This document shows positions 3,640 to 54,900 of a stretch of 64,000 bases of DNA, piece by piece. Under the pieces are notes generated by a model that was not told where the DNA came from, ran no database searches, and worked only from the letters and a program-made list of their open reading frames with translations. Where the stretch lies: positions 23,944,464-24,008,463 of the forward strand of contig NC_043011.1 of NCBI RefSeq assembly GCF_006345805.1. The letters are read 5' to 3'. Position 1 is the first letter of the stretch, and each line of letters begins with the position of its first letter. A program made the translations under genes and the position numbers. This DNA is from Octopus sinensis. Lineage: Eukaryota.

Positions 3640-4026
3640 TTTTCCTTGTTTCAGTCATTTTGACTGCGGCCATGCTGGAGCACCGCCTTTAATCGAGCAA
3701 CTCGACCCCGGGACTTATTCTTTTGTAAGCCCAGTACTTATTCTATCGGTCTCTTTTGCCGAACCGCTAAGTAACGGGGACATAAACACACCAGCATCGG
3801 TTGTCAAACAATGCTAGGGGAACAAACACAGACACACAAACATACACACACACATATATATGCATATATACGACGGGCTTCTTTCAGTTTCTGTCTACCA
3901 AATCCACTCACAAGGCTTTGGTCGGCCCGAGGCTATAGTAGAAGACACTTGCCCAAGGTGCCACGCAGTGGGACTGAACCCGGAACCATGTGGTTGGTAA
4001 GCAAGCTACTTACCACACAGCCACTC
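3640..4026 (-). mobile_element. tRNA-derived SINE family A
   Basis: Minus-strand head with A box TGGCTGTGTGG and B box GGTTCAGTCCC; central microsatellite; tail GACTGAAACAAG. Confidence 0.9.
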
Positions 4027-4209
4027 ATCTTTTTTCCTTATAATTATTTCAAAATATCTATATTTTATTTTAAAAATATCGAAATTGTAATGATAATAGA
4101 ATTTAGAACTGAAAATCTGTCGATCTTGAAGTATCTCAGAGTAAAAAATATTCATTGTGTAATTTTATGTTGGTGTCCAAATGAAATAATTGTTGCTGCT
4201 TCCAACTCG

Positions 4210-4716
4210 TGAGCATCAACATAGAGTTGGCTGTTGGAGAACATGTAGTAGAGAGAAGAAGTTCAATTATCTTGTAGGATTGACCCTGAGATTTATTAAT
4301 TGAAATGCTAAACTTAGTTTGACTGGAAACTGAAGCCCCTTAAATTCAAATGGAACATCTGTAGGTATGAGAGGAAATTTTGAAAGAAAGACAGCTTCTT
4401 CTTTGTGACTACCTGTTATGATTGTTGCCTGTAGGACATGGGACTTCATGGAAGTAACAATTAAGCGAGTTCCATTACACAGGCAAGGTGGGTTAAGATT
4501 CCTAGTCAACTTAATGGGAGCATCCAGCTTTAGTGTTAAGTTATGCGGTGGCATCCCAGTGGGTTTAAGAGTGTTCAGAAATTCAACAGGATATTGAACA
4601 GCCTGATCTTGATCGACTGTTGTGTGTATTGAAGGAAAAGTCATTTCTGATGAATCTGTTAACTTTTGAAGAAGTTTATGATTGAGCTTATCAACCATTT
4701 CATTTGTTGGAGCCAA
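4210..4716 (-). pseudogene. Helitron PIF1-like helicase C-terminal fragment
   Basis: YPVEFLNTLKPTGMPPHNLTLK...RNLNPPCLCNGTRL...FPVKL, then after frameshifts INKSQGQS and SQLYV (helicase motifs V/VI). Confidence 0.9.
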
Positions 4717-5760
4717 TATACCTCTTTCACAGCCAGTTTACAACAGTGTAATTGACAATCACAATACACTCACACACACATACACTCTCACATACACTGA
4801 CACGGTCATGCACTTTCACATACACTCAAATACATATACTAAGACAGACACACACAGACAAACATTTACGTAACGAACGCGCAAACACACACACAGACTG
4901 ACAGACATATATACACTTATATACCGAATGTGTCGTCGTCGTCGTCGTATAAAATATCCTTTACTATGTCGTATGTAACGGTCGCGCAAACAGACACACG
5001 CTCACAGATACATACACACTCATATACGAAATGTGACACCGTCGTCGTGGTTTAAGATGTCCTTTACTATAGTTGACTATAGAAAGATTATTTTCGAGAA
5101 GAGTTATATTATTTTAATCCAAATGAAAATAAAAATTACATGTCGACACTCGCGGGGTCTAATACTATTACTTTGTAAAATTTGATTTGATTTGGTGGAG
5201 AAGTTTGAGAATGCATAGGGGACAGATAGATAAAGAATTTTATATAGAGAGAGCTAATAAAGGAAGCAACAACCTAGAATCAATTGTTGGCAATTGCCAA
5301 AGAAAGAGGAAAATAATTTGAAGGATTTAACGGTTCATTTTCATAGAAAGTTACACATTTTCATAATTAAGGTTTTATAATTAACGTGGTGGAGGCAGTT
5401 GATTTGTTAACTGACAAAATGATAGCTACAAACGCAAATGTCAATTCATTGAATTTTTATATTTTGTTTTACGCTTCATGCTTCACAATATTCTCAACTT
5501 AAATAAGGAAAAGTTGCGGATATTTACTCTTCCGGATTGCTACAATAATTGATAAAAATCAAACTGAAAATAATTGATCTTGTGACGACCTTATATATAT
5601 GGTTCAATAGGAATAAAAGACATTAGATATTTTATAGCCGGAATAGATTGTCAATAATATACATTTATCAATCAATGAACACACACACACACACACACAC
5701 ACACACTGAGCTGAGGCTACGACAAAGCGCAACAGCGACTCAACAAGGAAACATATACTT

Positions 5761-14074: not shown

Positions 14075-14174
14075 NNNNNNNNNNNNNNNNNNNNNNNNNN
14101 NNNNNNNNNNNNNNNNNNNNNNNNNNNNNNNNNNNNNNNNNNNNNNNNNNNNNNNNNNNNNNNNNNNNNNNNNN
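14075..14174. other. Assembly gap (100 N)
   Basis: Run of exactly 100 N; true distance unknown. Confidence 1.
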
Positions 14175-15235: not shown

Positions 15236-15383
15236 TAGAAACAATTACTGCCTTCTAATACTACATGTTACATTTCGTCGTTACATACATTCATACATAC
15301 ATACATACATACATACATACATACATACATACATACATACATACATACATACATACACATATATATATGCATATATATATATA

Positions 15384-15423
<40 letters not shown>

Positions 15424-15483
15424 AATGTAGGTATGTAACGATGAAATGTAACATGTAGTATAAGAAGGCAGTAATTGTTTCTA
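15236..15483. repeat. Inverted repeat (~55-bp arms) enclosing a (CATA)n/(TA)n microsatellite
   Basis: TAGAAACAATTACTGCCTTCT..TACTACATGTTACATTTC.TCGTTACATAC matches the reverse complement of 15428-15483. Confidence 0.85.
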
Positions 15484-15773
15484 TATATATTATATATATG
15501 TATATATATATATAACATATATATATATATATATATATAATATATATAGCGTCGTATTTTTACGTTCGCTATTTCCAGTAAAATCGGTACTTTGTTGTGC
15601 CATTTATTTACTAATTTGTGTATTTTTTCCTCACGGCTACTTTTTACTGGAAGGCAATACTTTGTATTGCATTACTGATATTTTGAAACTTCTTCACCGT
15701 TTCTCGTACTGTTAGCGTTCCGTATTTCAGTCGAGTGTGTTAGTATTTATGTGGTAACATCGTAGTTTCGTCT

Positions 15774-15862
15774 TGGTATATGTTTGGCTGAAGAAGGTAA
15801 AGCAAATATGGGTGAGAGACATATCTTGCAAAACCTGAAACCTGCAGGTACCACATTATCCA
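15774..15862 (+). ncRNA. Type I hammerhead ribozyme (intact), predicted cleavage after GUA at 15850
   Basis: TTGG-CTGAAGA-AGGT..GCAA.ATATG[GGTGAGAGA]CATAT.TTGC..ACCT-GAAAC-CTGCAG-GTA-CCAC: exact core, extended stem II, perfectly palindromic stem III ACCTGCAGGT, bulged stem I. Confidence 0.85.
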
Positions 15863-16200
15863 TTTTCCGGGTGTTTCATCTTTCAGATGTTCTCCCTGGA
15901 GGTAAGACGGTTTTTTTTCTCTACTTTGTTGCACACACGCATTTTACTAATACATACGCGGTGAAGCTACACTTTAGCGTCGTATTTTTACGTTCGCTAT
16001 TTCCAGTAAATATCGGTACTTTGTTGTGCATTTTTTACTAATTTGTGTATTTTCCCTCACGGGCTACTTTTTACTGGAAGGCAATACTTTGTATTGCATT
16101 ACTGATATTTTGAAACTTCTTCACCGTTTCTCGTACTGTTAGCGTTCCGTATTTCAGTCGAGTGTGTTAGTATTTATGTGGTAACATCGTAGTTTCGTCT

Positions 16201-16287
16201 TGGTATATGTTTGGCTGAAGAAGGTAAAGCAATATGGGTGAGAGACATATCTTGCAAAACCTGAACCTGCAGGTACCACATTATCCA
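16201..16287 (+). ncRNA. Type I hammerhead ribozyme, second copy (GAAC instead of GAAAC), predicted cleavage after 16275
   Basis: Same as 15774-15862 apart from single-A deletions in homopolymers, one of them in the GAAA core (consensus error or real inactivation). Confidence 0.7.
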
Positions 16288-16644
16288 TTTTCCGGGTGTT
16301 TCATCTTTCAGATGTTCTCCCTGGAGGTAAGACGGTTTTTTTTCTCTACTTTGTTGCACACACGCATTTTACTAATACATACGCGGTGAAGCTACACTTT
16401 AGCGTCGTATTTTTACGTTCGCTATTTCCAGTAAATATCGGTACTTTGTTGTGCCATTTATTTACTAATTTGTATATAACATATATATATATAACATATA
16501 TATATAAATATATATATATATAACATATATATATATGCCTATATATATGCATGTATGTATGTGTATATATATATAACCACTAGGCCACGCGCCTTCACAC
16601 ACACAATATATATATAATATATATATATACCAATATATATATAT

Positions 16645-16724
<80 letters not shown>

Positions 16725-16725
<1 letters not shown>

Positions 16726-19465: not shown

Positions 19466-20511
<1,046 letters not shown>

Positions 20512-20659
20512 TGGAGTGGTCATTTTTTAGAGGCCAAATACACAGAGACACACTATTTATTCATTCTTCAGTTATTTATTATTGTTCTTATTTTATCTTA
20601 TGTCCATTGTCTAGAGATTTTTTTCCCTCACACATCTGCGACCTCTTCAGCGACCTCTC

Positions 20660-20799: not shown

Positions 20800-21599
20800 A
20801 AACGGATGGTAAACGGGCTTTTACAGTCGGCTTTTCGATGTCCCCATTGGCGGCGTTACACTTATCTGGCTTTTAAATAGCGTTTATAATAATACCGGCA
20901 CCCATAGCCCTTGGTAACTAATTCTGAAATAGCCTTTAAGATCTACGATTAACCACTGCAAGGGGAATTACTCCTGTAAGATAAACGGGGCTTGGTTTTT
21001 TCACAACGGGGGGTTTCCTTGACAAGGTTAGGCTAGATGAACACCACAACACATAAAAACATAATATATATATATATTTTTTTTTTCTGCCACCCACGGT
21101 TCTCACTGCAGTAGCCACTGACAGCCGAACGATCAAACGCACACACGTACACAAAAAATTTTTCTACCCCTACGCCAGCACACACATATTTAGAACAGTA
21201 GACACACACACGTCTCTAAGTAGATTTTTTCTCGCCCCTTATAAACATCCAATATTCCTTAAATAGTCAGAACTTTATTCTCGGTCACAAAGAACATCTA
21301 CACACCCTCACCCATGATTGACCGATGCCCGACCCGTTAAATTCTTCAGCCACCGGTTCTCACATACACTGATAAACAGTTTCGCCATGGGCTCTTAGGA
21401 GCCTAGTTCGATTTGTTTTTGCTCCGCCTCTGTTCTGTTTTTGTTTTTTCCAACGGATTTCCTATTTTCTTCCTGAAGAGAAAGACACAATATGGTCCCA
21501 TTATTCAATCGGATTTTGGTAAATTGTGCCTTTCGAAACACGTGTAGAATGAAATAAAACGATTTCTGTTCAATCTGCGTTCAGCTCCATTTCTTCAAT

Positions 21600-29669: not shown

Positions 29670-30678
29670 TGGGGAGAATTCACAAAAAAAAAAAACAAGA
29701 CGAAGACAGGTGGTGTAGACAACAAACAGATGTATTAGTTTAACGCTCGGGAAGTGAAAATGTCTTTAACGTTTCGAGCCTACGCTCTTCCATAGAAAGG
29801 AACGCAGAAAGAAGCAAGGAGAGAAAATAAAGAATGTGTAGTGGCTAGCGATCTATCTTGGCGAATGCCGGACAGAGGGGTTACACAGGAGAGCTAGGAA
29901 GAAGGGGAGTGATCCCAAAACGAAGGTATGCGTGCGTGTGTATAAGAGAGTATGTATGTGTGTGTGGAAGAGGGCTGGTGACCTTGACGTGTGCGTGTGT
30001 GTATGTGTAGGTGTGTGGATGTGTGGCTGGGAAGTGGTCAGTGCTAGTATGTGCGTGGTGGTATGACGTGATGTGATGTGGTGTTGTGTGGTATGGTGTA
30101 GAGGTGTATGGTGTGGTGTGATGGTGTTGGGATGTGGGGGAGGTGAGTGGGGAAAGCAAGGGAGGGGTGTGGTTAGGCTGAGGGGGTGTAGAGGTGGGGG
30201 TATGTGAGTAGGCTGAAATGGGGTATGTAGGAGTGGGTGTAAGGGATGGGGTGGGATGGGATGGATAGGGATGGTGGGGGTTGTGTGGGGTGGGGTGGTG
30301 TTACGAGGGAGGGGTGACGATGAAGGGAGAGGGAAGGGAGAAGGGGGTAGGAGTGAAGAGAAGAAGTAGGAGTCGGAGCAAGAGAGGAGAGGTGGGTGGG
30401 AGGAAGTAGGTGTGAGAAGGAGAGAGGAGAGGGGAGGAGAGTTGAGCCCATGTGGTGCAAAGGAGCGAAGAGAGAAGATTAATCCTTGTTCACGGCGCAA
30501 ACAGGAGTCCGGATGGCCCCTGTGCAAGGACAATCCGAACACAGACAGGTGTTGCAAAGATTGACCGGTAGAGCGGAAATGGCGCGAGACCGGGGTGTCA
30601 TTGCCGAGTCGATGTCTCGGAGGTGTTCCGCGAACCGGTCAGCCAAGCGGCGTTCCGTTTGCCCGATGTATAGAGAAG

Positions 30679-30733
<55 letters not shown>

Positions 30734-31490
30734 CAGGAGATAAAGTAGATGACATTGGTAGAAGTGCAGGTGAAGGAGTCGGTGATATGATGGGTGCCGG
30801 TGAGGATGGTGGTGTTGGAGAGGTAAGGGCAAGTGCAGCAGCGTGGACGGGAGCAGGGGAACGAGCCGGGCTGGGAGGTTGTGTTAGGGAAGAAGCTGTG
30901 GACCAAGATATCTCGTAGGTTGTGAGTTCATTTGAAGGATGGAAGGGCTCGGTTAGGGAAGATGTGCGAAGTGGAGGGGTCGGATTGGAGTCGACGGAAG
31001 GTTCGGAGAATTGTGCGTTCGAGAGGTAGGGTGGTGGGGTGGTAGGTGAGGGGAAACGGGAGGTGGGAGACGGCGGGGCGGGTGCGGGAAGGGGAGAGCA
31101 GATACACGGTCCACGGAAGTGCTCTGGCAAGGGTGGTGTGGATATTGGTGAGGGGATATCCATGTAGGATGAAGTGGCGAGCCATGAGTCGAAACTGAGT
31201 TTCAAAGTCATGGTCGTCACTTTAGAGCCTGCGTAGACGGGGGGATTGGGAATAGGGGATGGAAAGCTTGGTGTGTTTAGGGTGGGAGGAGGAGAAGTTG
31301 AGGTATGAGTGTGAGTTTGTGTGTTTGTAGTGGATGGAGGTGGTGAGAGTGGAGTGATGAATGCTGACCGAAATGTCAAGAAAGGAGACAAAGGTGTCAA
31401 TGATAGTGCAGAATGGGAGGGCAGGATGGAAAGATTTGACAAAAGAGAGGAAGGAGTCTAGATGTTCGCGGGAGAGTGAGGTTTCACCGC
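29670..31490 (-). mobile_element. 5'-truncated Neptune-type PLE: RT thumb, linker, GIY-YIG, purine-rich UTR, pLTR with hammerhead remnant
   Basis: FLDISVSI..TTSIHYK..SHSYLNFSSSHP; GYP; LQSDPSTSHIF; CSRPRCCTCP; FTCTSTNVIYFISC-[microsatellite]-CPSLYIGQTERRLADRFAEHLRDI; REQGLIFSL..APHGLN. Hammerhead-like CTATGGA-A-GAGC-GTAG-GCTC-GAAAC-GTT at 29764-29799. Confidence 0.9.
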
Positions 31491-31750
31491 TGGATGTAGT
31501 GCGAAGGTATCGTAAATTTAAAACAACGTAAATGAATTATTAGTACCTTTGTGACTTTTGGGCCATCCGTGACATTTGGGCCACCCAATATTACCACTAA
31601 AAGTCAACATATTTTAATAGCGAAGCACATTGTCACCGGAAGTAAAGACGTTTTAACAGTTATTCATATATCTGTGAAAGTGAACATATTTTAACTGCTT
31701 TTCATATTACCACCGAGCGATCTATGTAAACTCTAAAGTCAACATATGTA

Positions 31751-31967: not shown

Positions 31968-32344
31968 TAATTGTTCTTCACATTACACCAAAAGCCAACA
32001 TATTTTAACAGCATTGCATATTGCCACCAAAAAGTCAACATAATCAAACAGCTATTTACTTTACCAACAAATGTCAACATTTTAACGACTTTTTATATCC
32101 ACTATTCCTGGGAAGGTCGTGGGGTAGAGTTCTCTGTCACCTATTCCATGGGATCCTATCTGAAGTAATTCCCATTAGACTTCCTGATAGGCATCCCAAG
32201 CGCGACCAACTGAGACATGGATTATATCCAACCATATCATTCTTAGTTTGCTCCTTGGTCTCCTACCAGTTGGCTTGGCTTGAAGAGTCCGTTTTGCAAT
32301 TCTTTCATACAACATTCTAATCACATGTCCGCAGTACCGGAGCT

Positions 32345-33490
32345 GTGACGTGACGTCATAATGTGAAGAAGTAACAACTCTGCCTGAAGAGATTCCCTGA
32401 TCATCAAGCCACGCACCCTGTCGAGTAATGTTACCCTAGAGACCTAATGAAGGAACCTTTTTCGGCCGCCTGTATTCGGAAACGTACTCTTTCGGTCATT
32501 TTCCAGCATTCATGACCGAAATGAAAATTGCAAGTTGGGCATTTTTACCAACCTCTTTTGAGGGTCGAATGCTGGAGCTGGCACATTACTGTATCACCTC
32601 TCTAGCATCCAACTCAGCAACGTGCTTCCCATCTTTTCGTGAATAAGGCCCCAAAATACTCACACTTTCTCCATTTGCTTCAGTGATGTTCCACCAACAT
32701 AGAAAGTGCACTGGAAAGTTTTCTTGAGAGGACCAATTTCTCAGTCTTCGCAAAACTAATTCTCATCTCTGCTTTGCAACACTCGGCTACGAACCCATTT
32801 AGTGCATGCTGGAGATTAGCTTCTGATGAGCCAAGTAGCACCATGTCATCTGCAAATATCAGCCGACCGATCCTACTCCCACCAGTTGTGATACCCCTTC
32901 TACAACGGCCGCGCATGTCAATCCAGTTCATAAAAATTATGGAAAGGGAAAGTACCAAAATCGTACCCCGGCTGAAGTCTAACACCCACACTGAAAGCTT
33001 TAGACTTAGCACCATTAACCTAAACACAAACATCTTGACATTCGCATATGAACTTCACGGCAACCAGAAGTTCATTAATCCGAAACTTCTGCAAAACATG
33101 CACAGCATGTCCTGCGGCACGCAGTCATATGCCTTTTCGAGGCTTACAAAGCAAAATTTCCACAATTTCTCGAAGAACTATTGTAGAGTGAATACTCTGT
33201 CGGTTGTGCTGCATCGAGGAAGGAAGCCACATTGTTTTTTTAACAAGTTTGAGCTCGACGGTTTCGTTACATCCCTTTTCCAGATTCCTAGCGTAAACTT
33301 TGCCGGTGAGATTCAGCAAAGAAATTCCTCTAGGATTGGAATACTCTTTAAGCGCTTTTTAAAAATTGGGATTATCACTCCGGATTGCCATTGCTTTGGT
33401 ATCTTACCAGTAGTCTACGAGTCACTTGACACATACGAATCAGCCAAAGAATACTTCTCAAAGGCTTTTACCAGAGGAGGAGGAGTGAGC
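32345..33490 (-). pseudogene. RTE-clade (Rex3/Expander-like) reverse transcriptase relic
   Basis: LTGKVYARNLE; IIFMNWID...GSRIGRLIFADDMVLLGSSEANLQHALNGFVAECCKAEMRISFAKTE (FADD motif); frameshifted. Confidence 0.85.
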
Positions 33491-34369
33491 AATGTTAAGT
33501 GGGCGGAAGTAGCACCAGCGTGGGATGGTGAACCGGGAGGTAGGTGAATCGCATTTTGTTCCTCATATTACACTTATTACACCTATTCTCAGCGTAGTCA
33601 AACCAATCCCTCCAGCCAAGCATATTGTGTGAAAACTGTTTGTTACAGTATAGTGCTATTTAAAATTTTTTTTGTACTCAGTTCTTAATGAAAGAGTTAC
33701 TGGTAAGTTCTTTTGCATTAAGCAATTATGATAAAATATTAAGAATAAAGTTTTTTTTTTCCAATCACCGGTAGAGCATACATATTTCTGGAAAGTTATA
33801 GTGGTGCCTAGGGCAAAAATAGGTTGGGAAGCATTAGTCTAGATGCTGAGCAGATGAAAAGACATCAAAGTGACAACGGCCAGGATAAACCGGTTTAGTT
33901 AGCGAACTACTGAAATCATCTGTTGTCGTGAGTGTTTTTATTCAATTCCAACATTTTATTCAAAACTTTGTAGTTTAATAACCAGAGATGTTAGTAGTTA
34001 AAATTCCTTTTCTCTGATAAGTGAAACGAGAATTGAAAAGCCTGAAACAGGAATTGCAAAACGAAACTTTAAAGTGTAATGAGACGAAATGAAATGAAAG
34101 CAATTGAAATTAAATAAGTAAAAAAGTGATAATAACAATAATGTGGGAATTAAAATATTAGAGGAATAATTACTATTCTTGATGTGAATTATATTCAAGA
34201 GCGAAACTATTTCTGTGTCTCATCATCCTCATTCATTTTATTCAAGTTATTCAATTCAAATGCGACAATAAAAATATAGAGTGACTTTGTGTATGACTAA
34301 GGGAACATTCATTCCACTGGCTATTGTGTTCTTTGCTAATGACACAGTGTTTTGTGTACACTTTGATCA

Positions 34370-35261: not shown

Positions 35262-35703
35262 TCAAAATAAGCAACAAGAATGACTTCGATAATTTGGTAC
35301 AATCATTTTTGCTGTCTTCTACTTAAATTCCTTATATGGAGCTCTGAAATCCCCTTTACCCCATTTCTATAATTAGAAAATTCGTTATTGTCTCTTTCCA
35401 CTTATTCTTCCCTCTCAGAATCTTACAGTAGTGTGGAGCAACCGAATCTTAGTCAGTCAGTGGATGGGCTCTACTACTTCAAATGTTCTTAAAATTTAAA
35501 TCCACATCTTTGTCTATATATCTACCTTCTCTATAACGTTGCCACTTGATATGAACATTTTTGTATTAATGGAAAACCTCTATAATTGGCTGATGAGTAC
35601 TCAGCATTTTAAAACTGTTGTAATACTTACAACATTTAATAAAATGATGTAGTACGAAACGATCGTACCAAATTACCGGAGTCATTCTTGTTGCTTATTT
35701 TGA
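35262..35703. mobile_element. Solo pLTR-like element bounded by ~45-bp inverted repeats
   Basis: TCAAAATAAGCAACAAGAATGACT..G.TAATTTGGTAC.ATC (35262-35304) matches the reverse complement of 35661-35703. Confidence 0.7.
35583..35675 (+). ncRNA. Type I hammerhead ribozyme (intact), predicted cleavage after GUA at 35667
   Basis: TAATTGG-CTGATGA-GTAC..CATTTTA..TGTTGTAA[TAC]TTACAACA..TAAAATG..GTAC-GAAAC-GATC-GTA-CCAAATTA; palindromic stem III ACGATCGT. Confidence 0.88.
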
Positions 35704-35803
35704 TTATAATCACCCCAAGAATTTTTATGGACAACACCATACAGAATTCTGGTGCATCTAAATTAAGTACCATATTCATTTGAATCTAAATTTTTGCTGA
35801 ACT

Positions 35804-35837
<34 letters not shown>

Positions 35838-39651: not shown

Positions 39652-39940
39652 CAGTGTTTCTCAATCATGTTTGGCCTGTGGATCCTTTTGATTCCTATTC
39701 TACTCGACGGGACCCTTACAGCCATTTGAAGTTTTAATAAAATCTCATTGCATTTTTATAACTGAATATTATTAGGAATTGCATTAAAAAAATGTTAACA
39801 TATTTTGAACCACATGGTTCCGGGTTCAGTCCCATTGCGTGGCACCTTGGGCAAGTGTCTTCTACTATAGCTTTGGGCCGACCAAAGCCTTGTGAGTGGA
39901 TTTGGTAGACGGAAACTGAAAGAAGCCCGTCGTATACATG

Positions 39941-40010
<70 letters not shown>

Positions 40011-40830: not shown

Positions 40831-41197
40831 TAGGCGTAGGAGTGGTTGTGTGGTAAGTAGCTTGCTTCCCAACCACACAGTTCCGGGTTTAGTCCTACTG
40901 TGTGGAACCTTGGGTAAGTGTCTTCTACTATAGCCTCGGGCCAACCAAAGCCTTGTGAGTGAATTTAGTTGGCTGAAACTGAAAGAAGTCCGTCGTATAT
41001 ATATATATGTATATATATCTCTGTGGGTGTGCCTGTTTGTCTTCCCAACACCACTTGACAACCGGTATTGGTGTGTTTACGTCCCTGTAACTTAGCCAGG
41101 CTTAAAAATTAAGTTCTAGAGTCGATTCATTCGACTAAAAATTCAAGGCGTTGCCCTAGCATGGCCGCAGTCTAATGACTGAAACAGGTAAAAGATA
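40831..41197 (+). mobile_element. SINE family A
   Basis: Head and tail homology. Confidence 0.85.
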
Positions 41198-42689: not shown

Positions 42690-43075
42690 TTATTCTTTTA
42701 CTTGTTTCAGTCACTTGCTTGCGGCCATGCTGGGGCACCACCTTGAAGAATTTTAGTCGAACGAATCGATCCCAGTAAGCTTTTGTAAAGCCTGTTACCT
42801 ATTCTATCGGTCTCATTTGCTGAACCGCTAAGTTATGGGGACGTAAACACACCAGCATCAGTTGTCAAACGATGGCGGTGGGGAACAAACACGCACACAC
42901 TCACACACATACAATAGGCTTCTTTCAGTGTCCGTCTACCAAATCCATTCACAAGTCTTTGGTCAGCTCAAGGCTATTGTAGAAGACACTTGACCAAGGT
43001 TCCACGCAGTGGGACTGAACCCCGAACCACGTGGTGAGAAAGCAAGCTTCTTACCACAGAGCCATGCCTGCGCCT
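42690..43075 (-). mobile_element. SINE family A
   Basis: Head and tail homology. Confidence 0.85.
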
Positions 43076-44546
43076 TATTTTCTGTTGATTGCCCTGCAAA
43101 TATATAGACCAATCATGAGAAAACTGCTGCCCGCTTAACTTTCTGAATGGGACCCCTAACGAAAAACTACCTTGAATTGTTTTACTAGAACGGCCCGCCT
43201 GATAATGAACCATGTTTCATGCAACTTGCATTTCGAAAAGATTGCCCTTGCCTGATATTGACGTTACAAATAAAAACATTTTATTTTTCAGACTTGTATA
43301 AAATCTCATATTCATTCAAACACTACCTTCGAGCAGAAATCATAACTTTCCTCTGATACATCACAAATATTGAAATAACATCGAAAATTATTGAAGCCAC
43401 TGAACCACCACGGATATTTAAACCTATTTTGGAGTTATGATAGCGTTAGAGTTAAATCTGAACATATACTTCTGTGTTGTTATAAAGGAAAGCGAATCAT
43501 CATCAACAACAACAACAACAACAGCAACAAGTCCTGCAAATTGCTGTCTCATATTCTCATGCTCATAGGATCGGTTACTCATGTTCCATGGCGTATAAGC
43601 GACCGAGATGATATCATTTCTCGCTGAACGGGCGGAGCAAATGATGTCATCTTATGGTAGGGTTACTCATTTACTGCTGTCGACTGGAGCAACGTGAAAT
43701 AAAGTGTTTTTTTAGTCATGTCCGGGAATCGAAATCAAATTTTGCGGACATGGAGTGCAAACCCTAACCACAAGGCCACGCGCCTTCAATAAGAAAGTGA
43801 AAGACACGATGAATTCTGAAATACTCTGAAAAGTATTCTTTCTTATATGGAAGTACTATTGGATATACTGATAGGTATAAATTTGGGGGATTGGCAAACA
43901 ATAAATATTTCGTTACCCTATCCACATCTTTAAACAGGGAAACTACGAGCCAGGAATATTCAATTGTCTTCAATAATTTTGATGTATAAGACACCCATAA
44001 TTTCATTTATAACCAGAACTCCATTTATATTTTAAATTTATAGATATTTTCTATATTATCTATAATTTAATTTTAAATTTTTTTGGTATTGCTTCTAGAG
44101 TTTTCCTTTGAGGAATGTTGACGTGGTACATGCATTTCAGTAGTTGGTTAGTTTGAATGCATGCTGACAGGGTGTGCGTGCATATATGCTGAAAATCCCT
44201 TTGTGTTAATATGAAAGAAGTGTTATATTCACACAAAGCGTGTTGTACATTGGTGAAAGCCTTTTGTACTTGCCTCAAATGTAGAAAGAAATGAAAATAA
44301 TTTCAATGGTTCTATGTCAATTGTTATTTAGCAAGGGAATGTTTAGCCTACATGTGATGTAGATATTAACTAATCCAGTTCCATTGACCTGTAAGTTGTG
44401 TGAAAGTCACTTATTGAAAATGGTCAATGGTACATCACATTTTCCAGACAAATAAAACCATTGTTCTGATTTGTGAATTAAAACCATTGTTCTGGATATT
44501 TGTGAAGAAAATGAAATAAAGTACACATACATATACTATTAGTATG

Positions 44547-46162: not shown

Positions 46163-46583
46163 TACTCTTTTACTCTTTTACTTGTTTCAGTCATTTGACT
46201 GCGGCCATGCTGGAGCACCACCTTTAGTCGAGCAAATCGACCCCGGGACTTATTCTTTGTAAGCCCAGTACTTATTCTATCGGTCTCTTTTTACCGAACC
46301 GCTAAGTGACGGGGACGTAAACACACCAGGATCGGTTGTCAAGCGATGGTGGGGGGACAAACACAGACACACAAACATATACACACACATACATATATGT
46401 ATATATATATATATATACATATATAAGACAGGCTTCTTTCAGTTTCCGTCTACCAAATCCACTCACAAGGCATTGGTCGGCCCGAGGCTATAGTAGAAGA
46501 CACTTGCTCAAGATGCCACGCAGTGGGATTGAACCCGGAACCGTGTGGTTGGTAAGCAAGCTACTTACCACACAGCCACTCCT
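46163..46583 (-). mobile_element. SINE family A, near-consensus
   Basis: Full head, core and tail. Confidence 0.9.
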
Positions 46584-47055
46584 GAATGTTCTATTTACTT
46601 ATCCATTTGAAGTTTCATATCCCGTAGTACTTTCATGTGATCATTTTCAAGGATGTATTCTGTTTGATGATCATAAGCATTTTTTTTTCATATGTTAAAA
46701 TCAATGTAGATTTGTAAATTTATGATTGTAGCAACATTGCCGAGTCTTCCGTTTTCACAGAGCATCTGAGCAAACGTCTATGTTCTTCTTGATGTATCTT
46801 GTCTTGAATGCTTAATCCTCTGTGACCGGAGTCAAACCTCTCCTTCCGCTCCCTTCGTTAACTACTGGGATTGTGTGTGTGTGTGTGTGTGTTGTGTGTG
46901 GTGTGTGTGTGCGCGCGCGTGCGCGCGTGTATGTTTGGGAACATGTCCATGTTTATACTGTTTAACTTCGATGCTTTTATATATATGTATATATATATGT
47001 ATATATATATGTATGTATATATGTGTATATGTATATGTGTGTATATATATACGTA

Positions 47056-47968: not shown

Positions 47969-48065
47969 TTTTCACTTCCCTGAAGAAAAGATTACATTGT
48001 TTTATACCATTTATTCTTTTGAATAATATCAGTGAAATCTTCGAAACATGTGTCGAAAGTAAAAG
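47969..48065 (+). ncRNA. Type I hammerhead ribozyme (near-intact), predicted cleavage after GUC at 48054
   Basis: TTTTCACTTCC-CTGAAGA-A.AAGATT.CATTG...CAGTG.AATCTT.C-GAAAC-ATGT-GTC-GAAAGTAAAAG; the first stem II pair is an A.C mismatch. Confidence 0.72.
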
Positions 48066-49575: not shown

Positions 49576-49793
49576 ACTCTCTTTTACTCTTTTACTTGTT
49601 TCAGTCATTTGACTGCGGCCATGCTGGTGCACCGCCTTTAGTCGAGCAAATCGACCCCGGGACTTATTCTTTGTAAGCCCAGTACTATCGGTCTCTTTTA
49701 CCGAACCGCTAAGTGACGGGGACGTAAACACAGCAGCATCGGTTGTCAAGCAACGCTAGGGGGACAAACACAGACACACAAACACACACACAC

Positions 49794-49828
<35 letters not shown>

Positions 49829-49970
49829 CGACGGGCTTCTTTCAGTTTCCGTCTACCAAATCCACTCACAAGGCATTGGTCGGCCCGAGGCTATAGCAGA
49901 AGACACTTCTGAACCCGGAATCATGTGGTTGGTTAGCAAGCCACTTACCACACAGCCACTCCTACGCCTA
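49575..49970 (-). mobile_element. SINE family A (small internal deletion)
   Basis: Head and tail homology. Confidence 0.88.
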
Positions 49971-50652
49971 TGTATTTTTATAATCATAGATCATCGTTTA
50001 ATGATCCTCAGAAAGAAAGTAGTGCTAGTTTATCCCAAAAGGTAAGGCAACTTAAAAGAGACCACATAAACGTCTCAATTTCTTAGAATTTTGTTTCTTC
50101 TGCCCCCACTTATAAGATTAGAAATAGAACGTACCTTTTACGCCTTGAAGACTCTTATATAATTATGAAAAATGAACGGTTCTATCTTAAATTCGAGAGA
50201 TGAAAGAATTTCTCTCTTGTAGACATTTGTCCAAATTTATTTTCATTGACCTTAAATAGTTTTATTGATTACCTCTTTGTCATTTTCTCATTAGTTCTTA
50301 TTGCGCTCTTAGGTTATGTGTATGTATGTATTCTCTGTGTGAGCATGTATGTGTGCTTGTGTGGGTATGTTTATGCACGTGTTTTTATATGTATGTGTAT
50401 ATATATATATAATATTATATATATAATATTATATATATATATATATATATATTTGAGTAGTTGAATGAATTATCTTATTAAGGATAATTCGAAAGATAAC
50501 CGATACCTGGGTAGCAAATTCACATCAGAAAGAACACGGTTGAAATTACGTCCCTAGGGCATAGACTACGTGTCTTCGTGCGGAAATTTGTATGTTTATT
50601 TTAAAATTATAAGTATATGAAAGAATGGAGTTGAACGACTAGTTAACAAATA

Positions 50653-50749
50653 TCCTTTATTCTCGACATATGTTTCGAAGGCTGCATATTCCTAATTCCG
50701 AAGGAATAAGGAGTACATTATGCAGATTTCTCATCAGGAAAATCAAGGA
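50653..50749 (-). ncRNA. Type I hammerhead ribozyme (intact) in the left pLTR
   Basis: TCCTTGATTTTC-CTGATGA-GAA..CTGCATA...TATGCAG..TTC-GAAAC-ATAT-GTC-GAGAATAAAGGA: 12-bp stem I (1 mismatch), palindromic ACATATGT stem III. Confidence 0.9.
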
Positions 50750-51602
50750 ACTTATGTCGACATCAAAATGCATAAAAAAACTTTTAGCTGACCGCTCTCA
50801 AGGAGCCCATGGCGATAATGAGTGTCTCTTTATAAGGAGTGACGTCAGAGTGGCTGAATGTAGAAGAATCTAGAAGGTTCTAAAGGTTCAAGGGTTCAAA
50901 CGAAGTAGGAGGAGGGAGGCTTAAGAATAGTAAGGTGAGAGAGTGCAGGTCAAAAGAATGGTGGGTTTAAATGATTTCTTTTATGAATGAGTGCCTGTGT
51001 GTGTGACTGTATATAACTGTCTTAATGTGTGTATGTGTGTGTCTGAATGCGTGATTGTGTTTGTGGATGGGTAGATGTCAGAAAACTGACAGCTGTGAGG
51101 TGAGAGGTCTGTGTCTGTGTGTTCGATTATGTTTACTGTAGAGAAAAGAAAGTAGATAGCGAAAGGGAGAAAGAATCGGGCGAGGTGAGAGGCAACGCAA
51201 GAATGGATAGTTGTAATTGGGAATATAAGAAAATCTTTTTGACTATTGGGGTGAAATATAGCAAAAAATTTTTGGGGAAATCGAGGGGTTCTCTATATTA
51301 GTCACTATTTATATGAGTGAAAGGTGTGTCTTTTCCAGTGTAAATACCTGTAGGATCTTTCGACGATTGTATTTATTAAAGGGACTTTGGCGAACAAAAT
51401 ATGAAAAAGTTCGGAATTACAGATACCACAAAATTTTCTGCCTTTATCAAACGGGAAGGACACCGACAAAATTCGAGCTTGAACGTAGTGTTATTGTTCT
51501 TCAGACGCCAGACTAATTTGCTTAGCCCCGTGCTGTGTTGCTTTCTCTTATCTCTGAAAGTGGAATAATGGTTGGAACCAGTATTTAGAATTGCTCGAGA
51601 AG

Positions 51603-52515
51603 GAAATACAGAAGAATTACAGAACTACGAATAAGGATACAACTTGGAAATTAAGAAAATCATGGTTGCTCATGGTTTGCAAATGAAAACACAACCACTC
51701 AACCCAAGGCAACCAAGATTCATCGTCAAGGACCATAAACCAAACTTCCAAACCAACCAGCATTAAGGCTCATTCGCCCTTCTAGTTCCGACATCGGTTC
51801 CATCAGTAAGTACATTTTAGATAAATACATACCTAGATTAGTTAATAAGCTTAAACTCAACATATGGTCTAACTCCACTCAAGTCGTAGAATGGTTCTCT
51901 TCCATTTCTAATAAAAATAGCACTAAATTCATTCAATTCGATATTTCCAATTTCTACCCTTCGATAAACCCCAGCGTGCTCAATAAGGCCCTAAAAATTA
52001 CAACTAATAGTAATGATAATAAGATGAATAGTATCGTGGCCAAAGCCAGCAACAATTTTTACACCTATCACAACAATAAAAACTCTGTCTTAGTATCGGA
52101 AACCAACCGCAACAGATTAAAGTTCTTATCCAAAAATTCCAAAATTAGAAACACCACTTACCAATGCAAAATCTCTTCTGGAACCGATGTCTACTTCTAC
52201 ATTGGCACAACCTCTTCTAAATTATCCCAAAGGATCTCCAACCATTATTCCACTTTCAGAGATAAGAGAAAGCAACACAGCACGGGGCTAAGCAAATTAG
52301 TCTGGCGTCTGAAGAACAATAACACTACGTTCAAGCTCGAATGGTCCATTTTGTCGGTGTCCTTCCCGTTTGATAAAGGCAAAAAATTTTGTGGCATCTG
52401 TAATTCCGAACTTTTTCATATTTTGTTCGCCAAAGTCCCTTTAATAAATACAATCGTCGAAAGATCCTACAGGTGTTTGCACTGGAAAAGACACACCTTT
52501 CACTCATATAAATAG
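51603..52515 (+). pseudogene. PLE RT N-terminal fragment fused in frame to GIY-YIG endonuclease
   Basis: RFIVKDHKPNF(fs)RLIRPSSSDIGSISK...FIQFDISNFYPSI..KAL then TYQCKI...YIGTTSSKLSQRISNH..F..STGLSK.VW.LK...C..C..E; frame open from 51739 to 52515; no YxDD region. Confidence 0.9.
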
Positions 52516-53068
52516 TGACTAATATAGATAACCCCTCGATTTCCAAAAAAATTTTTGCTATGTTTCACCTCAATAGTCAAAATGATTTTCTTATATTCCC
52601 AATTACAACTATCCATTCTTGCGTTGCCTCTCACCTCGCCCGATTCTTTCTCCCTTTCGCTATCTACTTTCCTTTCTCTACAGTAAACATAATCGAACAC
52701 ACAGACACAGACCTCTCACCTCACAGCTGTCAGTTTTCTGACATCTACCCATCCACAAACACAATCACGCATTCAGACACACACATACACACATTAAGAC
52801 AGTTATATACAGTCACATACACAGGCACTCATTCATAAACGAAATCATTTAAACCCACCATTCTTTTGACCTGCACTCTCTCACCTTACTATTCTTAAAC
52901 TTCCCTCCTCCTACTTCGTTTGAACCCTTGAACCTTTAGAACCTTCTAGATTCTTCTACATTCAACCACTCTGACGTCACTCCTTATAAAGAGACACTCA
53001 TTATCGCCATTGGCTCCTTGAGAGCGGTCAGCTAAAGGTTTTTTATGCATTTTGATGTCGACATAAGT

Positions 53069-53165
53069 TCCTTGATTTTCCTGATGAGAAATCTGCCTAA
53101 TGTACTCCTTATTCCTTCGGAATTAGGAATTTCCAGCCTTCGAAACATATGTCGAGAATAAAGGA
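53069..53165 (+). ncRNA. Type I hammerhead ribozyme in the right pLTR, predicted cleavage after GUC at 53153
   Basis: Same core and stems I and III; the distal stem II helix is weakened (CTGCCTA/TTTCCAG). Confidence 0.85.
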
Positions 53166-53204
53166 TATTTGTTAACTAGTCATTCAACTCCATTCTTTCA
53201 TATA

Positions 53205-53326
<122 letters not shown>

Positions 53327-54059: not shown

Positions 54060-54900
54060 GACTGTATATTCTTATGTGTTAAGTGTATACGTTTTTATAA
54101 CACTTGTAATTTTATAATAATTTACTCCATATATTCGTTTTTTGTTCCTACTTTCTGATTGTCTCCCCTACCCCAGGCTAGTTTTTTAGTAAGGTAACTA
54201 TCTTGAATACACCGGCCGGTCTTGTCTGATCGATATTTTTTCCTTGTTAGGTTTTCTTAGTTTTTTTTCTCTGCCTGTATGTTCATTTTTACTTTAATAT
54301 TGTAACTTTTTCAAACATAGTCTTGCCTATCACTTTTTAGCCCCGTGTAAAATACATTTTCGTTTTTCGACATTAATATGTATATGTATAACTCTCTATT
54401 TTTCTACTAGTCCACCTGTTACGTTATATTCTACTATTCACACGTGGTACTGTTTATTATACTTTGTCTCGACCTGTTACCATTTTTTAAAACATACCGT
54501 TAGCTTTTTATTCTTATTCTTATTCTTATGTTATAGTTTACCGCACATATAGACGCACATACACATTGATATGTCTATCTTTTTTCTCTTTCGTCTCTCT
54601 TACTGTTATTATTACTGTTTTTTTTTTGCACTTTTATAACTTGCTTGTAAATATCCGATTTTTCCCCTATTACCCCATTTGTAGTCTCCTTTATTATATC
54701 TTATCTTAATTTATTTTATTAAGCCTTTTTTGCTGTCTTTACAAAAATTCCTCACACTGATGAAAATGACAATGCATAAATTTAATTATAATTACTATGG
54801 TTATAATTTTTTCTTACATATTTGTATTGTCCTTTGAAACGCGCGTATGTATTGAATCCTATTTTCTTTTAAAGTTAATTTTGATTCAGCATCTTTTTTT
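54060..54900 (+). mobile_element. PLE 3' UTR/pLTR relic
   Basis: 54210-54270 is homologous to the UTR of the 48.5-kb PLE; ends with a hammerhead. Confidence 0.55.
54747..54857 (+). ncRNA. Type I hammerhead ribozyme (intact core), predicted cleavage after GUA at 54847
   Basis: ATTC..ACA-CTGATGA-AAA.GACAATGCA...TGTATTGTC.TTT-GAAAC-GCGC-GTA-TGT..GAAT: 12/13-bp stem II, palindromic ACGCGCGT stem III. Confidence 0.8.

What the first reader, a model, noticed from the sequence alone, without database searches (positions are those of the whole stretch)
15548..16473. Candidate cephalopod retrozyme: ~425-bp tandem repeat with one type I hammerhead per unit
Seen: 2.2 tandem copies of a non-coding unit inserted in (TA)n. 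Unit 1 carries a complete hammerhead (CUGAAGA / GAAAC / GUA, palindromic stem III ACCUGCAGGU); unit 2 has the same motif missing one A. Cleavage at 15850 and 16275 would release a 425-nt monomer. Established: metazoan retrozymes are tandem repeats of a few hundred nt with a type I hammerhead that yield circular RNAs (reported in cnidarians, bivalves and amphibians) and are thought to be copied by Penelope-like RTs. Inference: this is such an element, and the non-integer copy number fits reverse transcription running more than once round a circle. PLE relics are abundant nearby. I know of no cephalopod description but cannot check novelty.
Basis: partly seen in the sequence, partly recalled or inferred. 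Interest (0 to 1): 0.92.

Follow-up and report, generated by a model that had tools for sequence, protein, structure and literature searches.

The report
Octopus hammerhead-ribozyme tandem repeat element
A 925-bp stretch of octopus DNA holds 2.2 head-to-tail copies of a 427-bp non-coding unit carrying a self-cutting hammerhead RNA motif; it fits a known class of genomic parasites (retrozymes, which ride on Penelope-like retrotransposons), so it is an ordinary, apparently unlisted example and not a new kind of thing.

Summary
TRF finds one 427-bp-period array (15547-16477, 2.2 copies, 97% matches) lying inside a (TA)n microsatellite. Unit 1 carries every invariant hammerhead (HHR) core base, with three helices in the right register. 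Unit 2 lacks one A of GAAA, and cutting at 15850 and 16275 would give 425 nt. The motif is not chance: the window holds six such motifs with a palindromic helix III, against none in 300 shuffles, and the helices covary among them. A model built from the other four motifs ranks the candidate as best outside hit (17.2 bits, E~0.07). Weak points: Rfam's Hammerhead_1 never detects it, the 10.1-11.1 pair is A-U rather than G-C, and no second copy of the unit could be found. The best reading is a non-autonomous, Penelope-like-element (PLE)-dependent element of the non-LTR retrozyme type, inserted as a longer-than-unit copy into AT-rich DNA. Rolling-circle copying of a circular RNA is possible but not needed, because PLE machinery copying multimeric transcripts gives the same partial tandem. 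Units 1 and 2 differ by 1 substitution and 7 one-base indels, a spectrum that suggests unpolished assembly errors, so the "broken" unit 2 is not secure. It is a new member of a known kind, of modest interest.

The parts
15293..15548 (.). Left flank: imperfect (TA)n/(TACA)n microsatellite, taken to be the target of insertion
   Evidence: TRF rows 15282-15413 and 15293-15548; sequence read
15549..15975 (+). Unit 1 (427 bp), non-coding, 38% GC, T-rich
   Evidence: TRF; alignment A1; blastn; composition
15780..15856 (+). Complete type I hammerhead motif of unit 1. Helix I 5' strand 15780-15787; core CUGAAGA 15788-15794; helix II 15795-15836 (42 nt: 4 bp, AAA/AAA internal loop, 9 bp with a C bulge, 9-nt loop); G12A13A14 15837-15839; palindromic helix III 15840-15849; A17 at 15850; helix I 3' strand 15851-15856. 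Predicted cleavage falls between 15850 and 15851
   Evidence: Motif scans; enrichment over shuffles; covariation with four other window HHRs; 17.2 bits, E~0.07 with model R1 built without it; constrained fold. No Rfam hit
15976..16401 (+). Unit 2 (426 bp), 98% identical to unit 1; differs by 1 substitution and 7 one-base indels
16207..16283 (+). Hammerhead motif of unit 2. As assembled, the core is broken (GA instead of GAA before A15.1, 16263-16264) and helix II is one base shorter. The equivalent cleavage site is 16275|16276
   Evidence: model R1 gives only 10.4 bits, E 5.4
16402..16473 (+). Partial unit 3: the first 72 nt of the unit (the boundary is ambiguous up to 16477). It ends 18 nt after a small hairpin, GGUAC-UUUGUU-GUGCC (16440-16455)
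16474..16725 (.). Right flank: (TA)n microsatellite with the same AACA interruptions as the left flank
   Evidence: TRF 16473-16725; sequence read

Best explanation
This is a non-coding, non-autonomous retroelement of the non-LTR retrozyme type, that is, a short HHR-bearing derivative that depends on Penelope-like elements (PLEs). It sits in an octopus genome as a 2.17-unit head-to-tail copy inserted into a (TA)n microsatellite.

Inferred mechanism: a tandem donor copy is transcribed into a multimeric RNA. Two neighbouring HHRs pair through the palindromic helix III (ACCUGCAGGU) into a dimeric ribozyme that cuts after GUA and releases 425-427-nt monomers. These fold into a strongly self-paired structure and may be ligated into circles. 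A PLE RT/GIY-YIG protein nicks AT-rich DNA and copies more than one unit length of the RNA, either a circle or an uncut multimer, which gives the partial tandem.

Shown here: the tandem structure, the microsatellite context, the HHR motif and its kinship with other HHRs in the window, the excess RNA foldability, and a PLE relic in the window.

Inferred: transcription, cleavage, circularisation, dependence on PLEs, and membership of a multi-copy family.

As assembled, this copy has one intact HHR and could not process itself. That defect may be an assembly error.
For: Tandem of 427 bp x 2.2, the only array in 64 kb with a period above 103 bp.

Both flanks are (TA)n. The other HHR-bearing pieces in the window also abut microsatellites, which cover only 10.8% of the window. 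PLE endonuclease prefers AT-rich DNA, and a microsatellite insertion bias is reported for the related Naiad/Chlamys PLE clades (PMC11167929; PMC8557442).

HHR: all invariant core bases are present. The strict motif occurs 6 times, against 0 in 300 shuffles. On the trimmed alignment of five window HHRs, 84.6% of cells pair against 60.9% when shuffled, and 9 of 13 pairs carry compensatory changes. Helix I, which the scan did not require, is 80% paired. It is the best non-training hit of a covariance model built from the other four HHRs.

Helix III: -1.4 kcal/mol as a hairpin against -19.7 kcal/mol as a dimer duplex. This is the behaviour described for metazoan type I HHRs (PMC4209133; PMC3088659).

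Monomer RNA: circular MFE -112.3 kcal/mol against -89.5 +/- 5.2 for 200 shuffles, z = -4.4. The HHR fold costs only 4.8 kcal/mol above the MFE.

GC is 38% and there is no ORF with relatives.

No PLE ORF is attached. The flanks are microsatellite, and the nearest RT/GIY-YIG relic is 14 kb away and unrelated in sequence.

The repeat period equals the 427-bp unit and not a PLE-sized unit of about 3 kb.
Against: Rfam Hammerhead_1 does not detect the motif at any threshold tried. A neighbouring HHR at 35585-35673 is detected at 19.6 bits.

The 10.1-11.1 pair is A-U. G-C there is the most conserved pair after 15.1-16.1 (PMC3088659; PMC4209133).

The covariance-model E-value is only about 0.07, with rough calibration.

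Unit 2's core is broken as assembled.

No second copy of the unit was found in the window, in 20 kb of O. sinensis, in the protein collection or in JGI metagenomes. A dispersed family is therefore not shown.

No expression or cleavage data could be obtained. The canonical loop I-loop II contacts used to define bona fide retrozyme HHRs were not identified.
Confidence: 0.55

Rival explanations
1. Ordinary debris of an autonomous PLE. The 925 bp would be a 5'-truncated 3' end, or solo pLTR, of an element whose pLTR carries an internal 427-bp duplication with tandem HHRs. It would not be an independently mobilised small element.
For: PLE pLTRs carry type I HHRs, often in tandem, and most genomic PLE-HHRs are dispersed single motifs from truncated copies (PMC4209133; PMC7761336). 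The candidate's HHR has the PLE-style long helix II and palindromic helix III, like the five single HHR relics in this window. Retrozyme consensus sequences are themselves close relatives of pLTRs (10.64898/2026.07.22.740005).
Against: No PLE ORF adjoins it, and it has no similarity to any PLE relic in the window. None of the other HHR-bearing relics here contains an internal long-period tandem. The repeat period equals the whole inserted unit.
Confidence: 0.2
2. A single HHR-bearing insertion, like the monomeric 35.2-kb element, that was later duplicated at the DNA level by replication slippage or unequal exchange next to an unstable microsatellite. No longer-than-unit reverse transcription would be involved.
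For: Single-unit HHR elements in (TA)n exist in the same window at 35262-35810. The microsatellite context is recombination- and slippage-prone. The units are nearly identical.
Against: A DNA duplication of 427 bp plus a further 72 bp in phase needs two events or an odd breakpoint. Partial head-to-tail tandems are the expected direct product of PLE or retrozyme insertion (PMC8557442; PMC7229834).
Confidence: 0.12
3. Assembly artefact: one unit was falsely duplicated during long-read assembly.
For: The units differ almost only by one-base indels (1 substitution, 7 indels). A diverged inverted-repeat pair in the same window shows 22 substitutions and 2 indels (Fisher p = 8e-5). This is the signature of consensus errors. 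A scaffold gap lies 1.4 kb upstream at 14075-14174.
Against: The indel spectrum is explained at least as well by two truly identical units that short reads could not polish. The array lies inside a contig with unique structure on both sides. A 2.17-copy structure with an in-phase partial third unit is not a typical collapse or expansion error.
Confidence: 0.06
4. A chance hammerhead-like motif in an unrelated minisatellite.
For: No Rfam hit; A-U at 10.1-11.1; helix I is interrupted by a bulge.
Against: No strict motif occurred in 300 shuffled windows. The candidate is the top outside hit of the local HHR model. It shares the architecture of the other window HHRs, with compensatory changes.
Confidence: 0.04

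Closest known systems
Metazoan non-LTR retrozymes (Cervera & de la Pena 2020, PMC7229834; review PMC7761336)
   Same: Head-to-tail repeats with a 150-450 bp monomer, from dimers upward. One type I HHR per unit, GC below 45%, no ORF, LTR, PBS or PPT. Self-paired monomer RNA and co-occurrence with PLEs. Helix III is a short stem capped by a tetraloop, as in invertebrate examples.
   Different: Helix II is far longer (42 nt) than the canonical 4 bp plus loop, and no loop I-loop II contacts were recognised. The 10.1-11.1 pair is A-U. Only one intact HHR is present as assembled. Copy number and circular RNA are unknown. No paper found in the two searches run describes one in a cephalopod.
[quoted passage not shown] 2017, cited in PMC7761336)
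   Same: Helix II larger than usual, a short or poorly defined helix I, a palindromic helix III that implies action as a dimer, and high sequence variability within one genome. Five such motifs lie in this window, one pair within the inverted-repeat relic that carries the ORF read as GIY-YIG.
   Different: This copy is not attached to any RT/GIY-YIG ORF. Its repeat period is the 427-bp unit itself. Helix III is longer (3 bp plus tetraloop) than in minimal PLE-HHRs. The conserved G10.1-C11.1 pair is absent.
Repeat-type hammerheads of Aedes aegypti and newt satellite 2 (PMC3088659, Fig. S8; Epstein & Gall 1987 as cited there)
   Same: Palindromic stem and loop III that can form a 10-bp intermolecular helix in a dimeric ribozyme. 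They are embedded in tandem genomic repeats.
   Different: Those occur in long, abundant arrays with canonical short helix II. Here only 2.2 units are seen and the abundance is unknown.

Membership tests
Non-LTR retrozyme | Head-to-tail tandem repeat, monomer about 150-450 bp, at least a dimer | tested here: met
   427 bp x 2.2, 97% matches
Non-LTR retrozyme | A complete type I HHR in each unit (operationally: at least 2 consecutive units with complete HHR, 10.64898/2026.07.22.740005) | tested here: not met
   Unit 1 is complete. Unit 2 has GA for GAA and a shortened helix II as assembled. The defect may be an assembly error, given the indel-dominated differences.
Non-LTR retrozyme | Low GC (<45%), no ORF, no LTR/PBS/PPT | tested here: met
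   GC 38-39%. The longest frame is 91 aa and has no relatives. No terminal repeats other than the tandem itself.
Non-LTR retrozyme | Monomer RNA predicted to be stable and highly self-paired | tested here: met
   Circular MFE -112.3 against -89.5 +/- 5.2 kcal/mol, z = -4.4, 0 of 200 shuffles as stable. However, the fraction of paired bases (59%) is no higher than in shuffles.
Non-LTR retrozyme | Expressed and processed into linear and circular monomer RNA | not testable with these tools
   No octopus RNA data were reachable. The unit's longest ORF is absent from the protein collection, which includes Logan assemblies, but this is not informative.
Non-LTR retrozyme | Dispersed multi-copy family in the genome | not testable with these tools
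   No other copy in the 64-kb window, in 20 kb of O. sinensis or in JGI metagenomes. No cephalopod genome could be searched.
Non-LTR retrozyme | Co-occurrence with autonomous PLEs | tested here: met
   The relic at 30601-31536(-) has 44 relatives, some carrying RVT_1 and others GIY-YIG domains. A motif-read GIY-YIG ORF at 51739-52512 is 78% identical over 85 residues to an O. sinensis protein. Only relics were seen, not intact elements.
Hammerhead ribozyme, type I (Rfam RF00163) | Invariant core C3-A9, G12-A14, A15.1-U16.1, H17, with three helices in register and helix I open | tested here: met
   Unit 1, 15788-15850
Hammerhead ribozyme, type I (Rfam RF00163) | G10.1-C11.1 closing pair of helix II | tested here: not met
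   A15795-U15836. The same A-U occurs in the window HHR at 54757.
Hammerhead ribozyme, type I (Rfam RF00163) | Score at or above Rfam's gathering threshold (34 bits) | tested here: not met
   No hit at gathering score, nor at E<=10 on 1.2 kb or 121 nt. The neighbour at 35585-35673 reaches 19.6 bits with a 51-nt helix II insertion.
Hammerhead ribozyme, type I (Rfam RF00163) | Site-specific self-cleavage | not testable with these tools
   Needs in vitro transcription of monomer and dimer constructs.
PLE pseudo-LTR (part of an autonomous Penelope-like element) | Direct repeat flanking, or continuous with, an RT + GIY-YIG ORF | tested here: not met
   Both flanks are microsatellite. No RT or GIY-YIG-like frame between 13.6 and 19.3 kb. 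No similarity to the PLE relics in the window. This is tested for this copy only.

The most novel reading that the evidence does not exclude
The unit is a very young copy of a currently active cephalopod retrozyme family. If the one-base indels are assembly errors, units 1 and 2 differ by a single substitution. Such a family would produce abundant ~425-nt circular RNAs through a dimer-only hammerhead with an unusually long helix II and an A-U 10.1-11.1 pair, mobilised by octopus PLEs into (TA)n microsatellites. No hammerhead or retrozyme in a cephalopod turned up in the two literature searches run here.
Probability: 0.25. Interest if true: 0.5.

Novelty: new member of a known kind. Interest (0 to 1): 0.3.

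Why it matters
If confirmed genome-wide, it would add cephalopods to the animals that carry hammerhead-bearing retrozymes. It would also give a natural HHR variant (42-nt helix II, A-U at 10.1-11.1, 10-bp dimer helix III) for testing how much the PLE-type ribozymes tolerate.

The window is a compact illustration of the retrozyme-PLE link. It holds one tandem HHR element, several single HHR relics, an inverted-repeat relic carrying a frame read as GIY-YIG, and a confirmed RT/GIY-YIG relic. All the HHR elements abut microsatellites. This does not open a new question, because the class, its ribozyme, its association with PLEs and its presence in molluscs are already published.

Tried and rejected
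(1) Rfam. No hammerhead hit for the candidate at the gathering threshold or at E<=10. The low-scoring miRNA and other hits in the flanks are TA-repeat artefacts.

(2) Looking for relatives of the unit. blastn within the window found nothing. The 91-aa frame had no relative among 5.8 billion proteins. An exact 22-mer spanning the G12-A14 core bases, helix III and the cleavage site found nothing in JGI metagenomes. Two O. sinensis loci, fetched through the relative of the 51739-52512 frame, held no copy. No cephalopod genome is searchable with these tools, so copy number stays open.

(3) Pfam and NCBIfam on the suspected PLE frames gave nothing significant, and neither did the PDB sequence search. 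The PLE identity of 30601-31536(-) was established only through homologues carrying RVT_1 and GIY-YIG.

(4) An inverted 'tail' like that of the 35.2-kb element was sought at the ends of the array and not found.

(5) tRNA and SINE-type features: no tRNA-like gene in the window. The bacterial promoter/terminator scan is irrelevant for this organism.

(6) A second ribozyme on the minus strand: none found.

(7) The plain MFE fold of the 111-nt HHR region is no more stable than shuffles (z = 0.33). The short motif's thermodynamics alone therefore say nothing.

Full report
**What is there.** TRF finds one long-period array at 15547-16477: period 427, 2.2 copies, 97% matches, score 1795. blastn of unit 1 (15549-15975) recovers unit 2 (15976-16401, 98.1%) and a partial third copy (16402-16473/7). 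Nothing else in the 64-kb window matches it. It is the only array with a period above 103 bp in the window.

Both flanks are (TA)n with the same AACA interruptions. The array therefore looks like an insertion that split one microsatellite, and no target-site duplication can be read in such sequence.

The unit is 38% GC and T-rich. Its longest stop-to-stop frame (91 aa) has no relative among 5.8 billion proteins. The host is an octopus: a frame at 51739-52512 is 78% identical over 85 residues to an Octopus sinensis protein.

**The hammerhead motif.** Unit 1 reads as follows:
- helix I, 5' strand: AUGUUUGG (15780-15787)
- core: CUGAAGA (15788-15794)
- helix II: 42 nt (15795-15836), made of AGGU/ACCU, an AAA/AAA internal loop, 9 bp with a C bulge, and a 9-nt loop
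- G12-A14: GAA (15837-15839)
- helix III: ACCUGCAGGU (15840-15849)
- A17 at 15850
- helix I, 3' strand: CCACAU, giving 3+3 bp with a UU bulge

These assignments rest. All invariant core bases are present, and helix I is the open one, which makes this a type I motif. Unit 2 has GA for GAA and one base fewer in helix II. Cuts at 15850 and 16275 would give 425 nt.

**Is it chance?** My scan required CUGANGA, at least 3 bp of helix II, GAAA, an A-palindrome-U helix III and a non-G base at position 17.
- It finds six sites in the window. The mean is 0.0 and the maximum 0 in 300 dinucleotide-preserving shuffles. The looser version gives 7 sites against a mean of 0.31.
- The other sites are 21473-21546(+), 35590-35667(+), 53081-53153(+), 50737-50665(-) and 54757-54847(+). 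All have a long helix II (about 50-77 nt) and a 6-nt palindrome in helix III.
- On a trimmed alignment of the five distinct motifs, 84.6% of cells pair against 60.9% after shuffling and 28-42% when partners are slid. Nine of 13 pairs show changes on both sides.
- Helices II and III are partly paired by selection. Helix I was not required by the scan and is still 80% paired, with four covarying pairs.
- A covariance model built from the four other motifs and run over the whole window without filters ranks the candidate as the best non-training hit. It aligns full-length in the right register at 17.2 bits, E about 0.07. Unit 2 drops to 10.4 bits.

**Evidence against the motif.**
- Rfam's Hammerhead_1 never reports the candidate, not even at E<=10 on 121 nt.
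- It does report the neighbour at 35585-35673, at 19.6 bits. That is below the gathering score of 34 because of a 51-nt insertion in helix II.
- The candidate also has A-U at 10.1-11.1. G-C there is the most conserved pair after 15.1-16.1 (PMC3088659; PMC4209133). The 54757 motif shares this A-U.

My conclusion is that this is a real member of the octopus HHR population. It is a divergent one, and its catalytic competence is unproven.

**Properties of the RNA.**
- The 425-nt monomer, folded as a circle, has an MFE of -112.3 kcal/mol. Two hundred shuffles give -89.5 +/- 5.2 (z = -4.4, none as stable). The fraction of paired bases is not raised.
- For a circular permutation of unit 1, the HHR-constrained fold (-107.9) lies 4.8 kcal/mol above the MFE (-112.7). 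The large self-paired domain closes helix I.
- Helix III alone is worth -1.4 kcal/mol as a hairpin. Two copies form a 10-bp duplex of -19.7 kcal/mol.

This is the classical signature of metazoan type I HHRs, which cut as dimers in multimeric transcripts and stay quiet in monomers (PMC4209133; PMC3088659 Fig. S8; PMC7229834).

**Context.**
- A PLE relic lies at 30601-31536(-). Its joined frames have 44 relatives (E down to 1e-53). One of those re-scanned carries RVT_1 upstream and two carry GIY-YIG downstream.
- The inverted repeat 50608-51472/52348-53210 is 97% complementary. It carries a frame that I read as a GIY-YIG endonuclease from its sequence motifs alone, since Pfam gave no match. It has an outward-pointing HHR 57 nt from each outer end. 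This matches the inverted 5'-truncated arrangement described for PLEs (PMC8557442).
- The piece at 35262-35810 is a single HHR unit in (TA)n. Its 5' end carries a 39-nt inverted copy (37/39) of the sequence that begins 3 nt before its own cleavage site.
- All the HHR-bearing pieces abut microsatellites, which cover only 10.8% of the window. PLE endonuclease prefers AT-rich DNA (PMC11167929), and a microsatellite insertion bias is reported for the related Naiad/Chlamys PLE clades (PMC8557442).

**Interpretation.** The anatomy meets the structural description of non-LTR retrozymes (PMC7229834; PMC7761336). It also fits the recent conclusion that these are non-autonomous derivatives of PLE pseudo-LTRs (10.64898/2026.07.22.740005). 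Because the period equals the whole 427-bp unit and no ORF is attached, a small non-autonomous element is more parsimonious than a fragment of a 3-kb PLE.

That is allowed but not required. Neither end of the array coincides with the cleavage site, which excludes a cleaved linear monomer as template. An uncut multimeric transcript copied from an internal initiation site would give the same product, as shown in vitro for a Poseidon PLE where HHR cleavage was dispensable (PMC11167929).

Units 1 and 2 differ by 1 substitution and 7 one-base indels, five of them in homopolymer runs. The diverged inverted-repeat arms in the same window differ by 22 substitutions and 2 indels (Fisher p = 8e-5). This is not the spectrum of ordinary divergence.

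The likeliest explanation (inference) is residual long-read consensus error in a region that short reads cannot polish because the units are truly near-identical. RT slippage at birth is an alternative. Either way, the missing A of unit 2 is not secure.

The insertion is probably very young. With one substitution per 427 nt, and the calibration of JC 0.09 to about 25 My in PMC13282606, it would be well under a few million years old. This is a rough estimate.

**Novelty.** My searches found no paper describing hammerhead ribozymes or retrozymes in cephalopods, and the O. vulgaris repeat annotation does not mention them. Against that:
- retrozymes are characterised in a mussel and reported bioinformatically in many invertebrate phyla (PMC7229834);
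- HHRs are reported as universal in canonical PLEs (PMC8557442);
- the O. vulgaris repeat annotation lists 30 Penelope families (PMC13282606).

This is a new member of a known kind. What remains open is copy number, continuity with PLE ORFs elsewhere, read-level confirmation, self-cleavage and circular RNA. All of it needs a cephalopod genome, reads or bench work that these tools do not provide.

Noticed in passing
window 35262-35810: A single HHR-bearing non-coding unit of about 550 bp lies between two (TA)n tracts (HHR 35590-35667; Rfam Hammerhead_1 19.6 bits). Its first 39 nt (35262-35300) are an inverted copy, 37/39 identical, of 35665-35703. That stretch starts 3 nt before the predicted HHR cleavage site. 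It may be a PLE-type 'tail' or a snap-back at an HHR-generated RNA 5' end.
   Followed up: partly
window 50608-53210: An inverted-repeat relic. The arms 50608-51472 and 52348-53210 are 97% complementary (22 substitutions, 2 indels). Outward-pointing HHRs lie at 50737-50665(-) and 53081-53153(+), 57 nt from each outer end, and (TA)n follows directly. The central frame 51739-52512 has an RT-motif-like start fused to a domain read as GIY-YIG from its motifs (no Pfam match). It is 78% identical over 85 residues to an O. sinensis protein annotated only as 'uncharacterized'. It may be an internally deleted PLE of the short 'Hydra'-like type, but the clade was not tested.
   Followed up: partly
window 21473-21546 and 54757-54847: Two further complete HHR motifs with a long helix II and a 6-nt palindromic helix III, each in a non-coding stretch bounded by microsatellites. 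The motif at 54757 shares the unusual A10.1-U11.1 pair with the candidate. Weaker, possibly decayed motifs lie at 34014-34076(+) and 48011-48062(+).
   Followed up: partly
window 29800-31536 (-): A Penelope-like element relic (RT C-terminal region, Cys/His-rich linker, start of GIY-YIG) is broken by frameshifts and cut off by a (CT)n-type microsatellite inside the endonuclease domain. Its homologues carry RVT_1 and GIY-YIG. My scan found no HHR downstream of it.
   Followed up: partly
window 15549-16401: The differences between the two full units are almost all one-base indels (7 indels, 1 substitution). The inverted repeat at 50.6-53.2 kb shows mostly substitutions (22 substitutions, 2 indels). 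This suggests locally unpolished assembly in the tandem.
   Followed up: yes
window 14075-14174: A run of 100 N (scaffold gap) lies 1.4 kb upstream of the array.
   Followed up: no
window 3826-4047, 20302-20523, 42867-43088, 46381-46602, 49784-50005 (+); inverted copies near 39808-40001 and 40840-41040: A ~220-bp interspersed repeat family, 63-87% identical to its reference copy. Several copies lie next to CA/TA microsatellites (seen for 3826, 20302, 39808 and 49784; the others were not checked). It is probably an octopus SINE and was not classified.
   Followed up: no
window 4270-4737(-), 57630-58124(-), 61364-62074(+), about 32000-33600(-): Other transposon relics: a Pif1 2B helicase domain (Helitron-like), a DDE_1 pogo/Tigger-type transposase, a Tc1/mariner transposase (DDE_3 plus HTH_Tnp_Tc3_2), and a LINE-type RT frame recognised by eye only.
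   Followed up: partly
window 16440-16473: The array ends 18 nt after a small hairpin (GGUAC-UUUGUU-GUGCC) that also occurs at the same place in unit 1 (15586-15601). PLE RT is reported to initiate inside a stem-loop of its template (PMC11167929). Whether this hairpin marks an initiation site is speculation.
   Followed up: no
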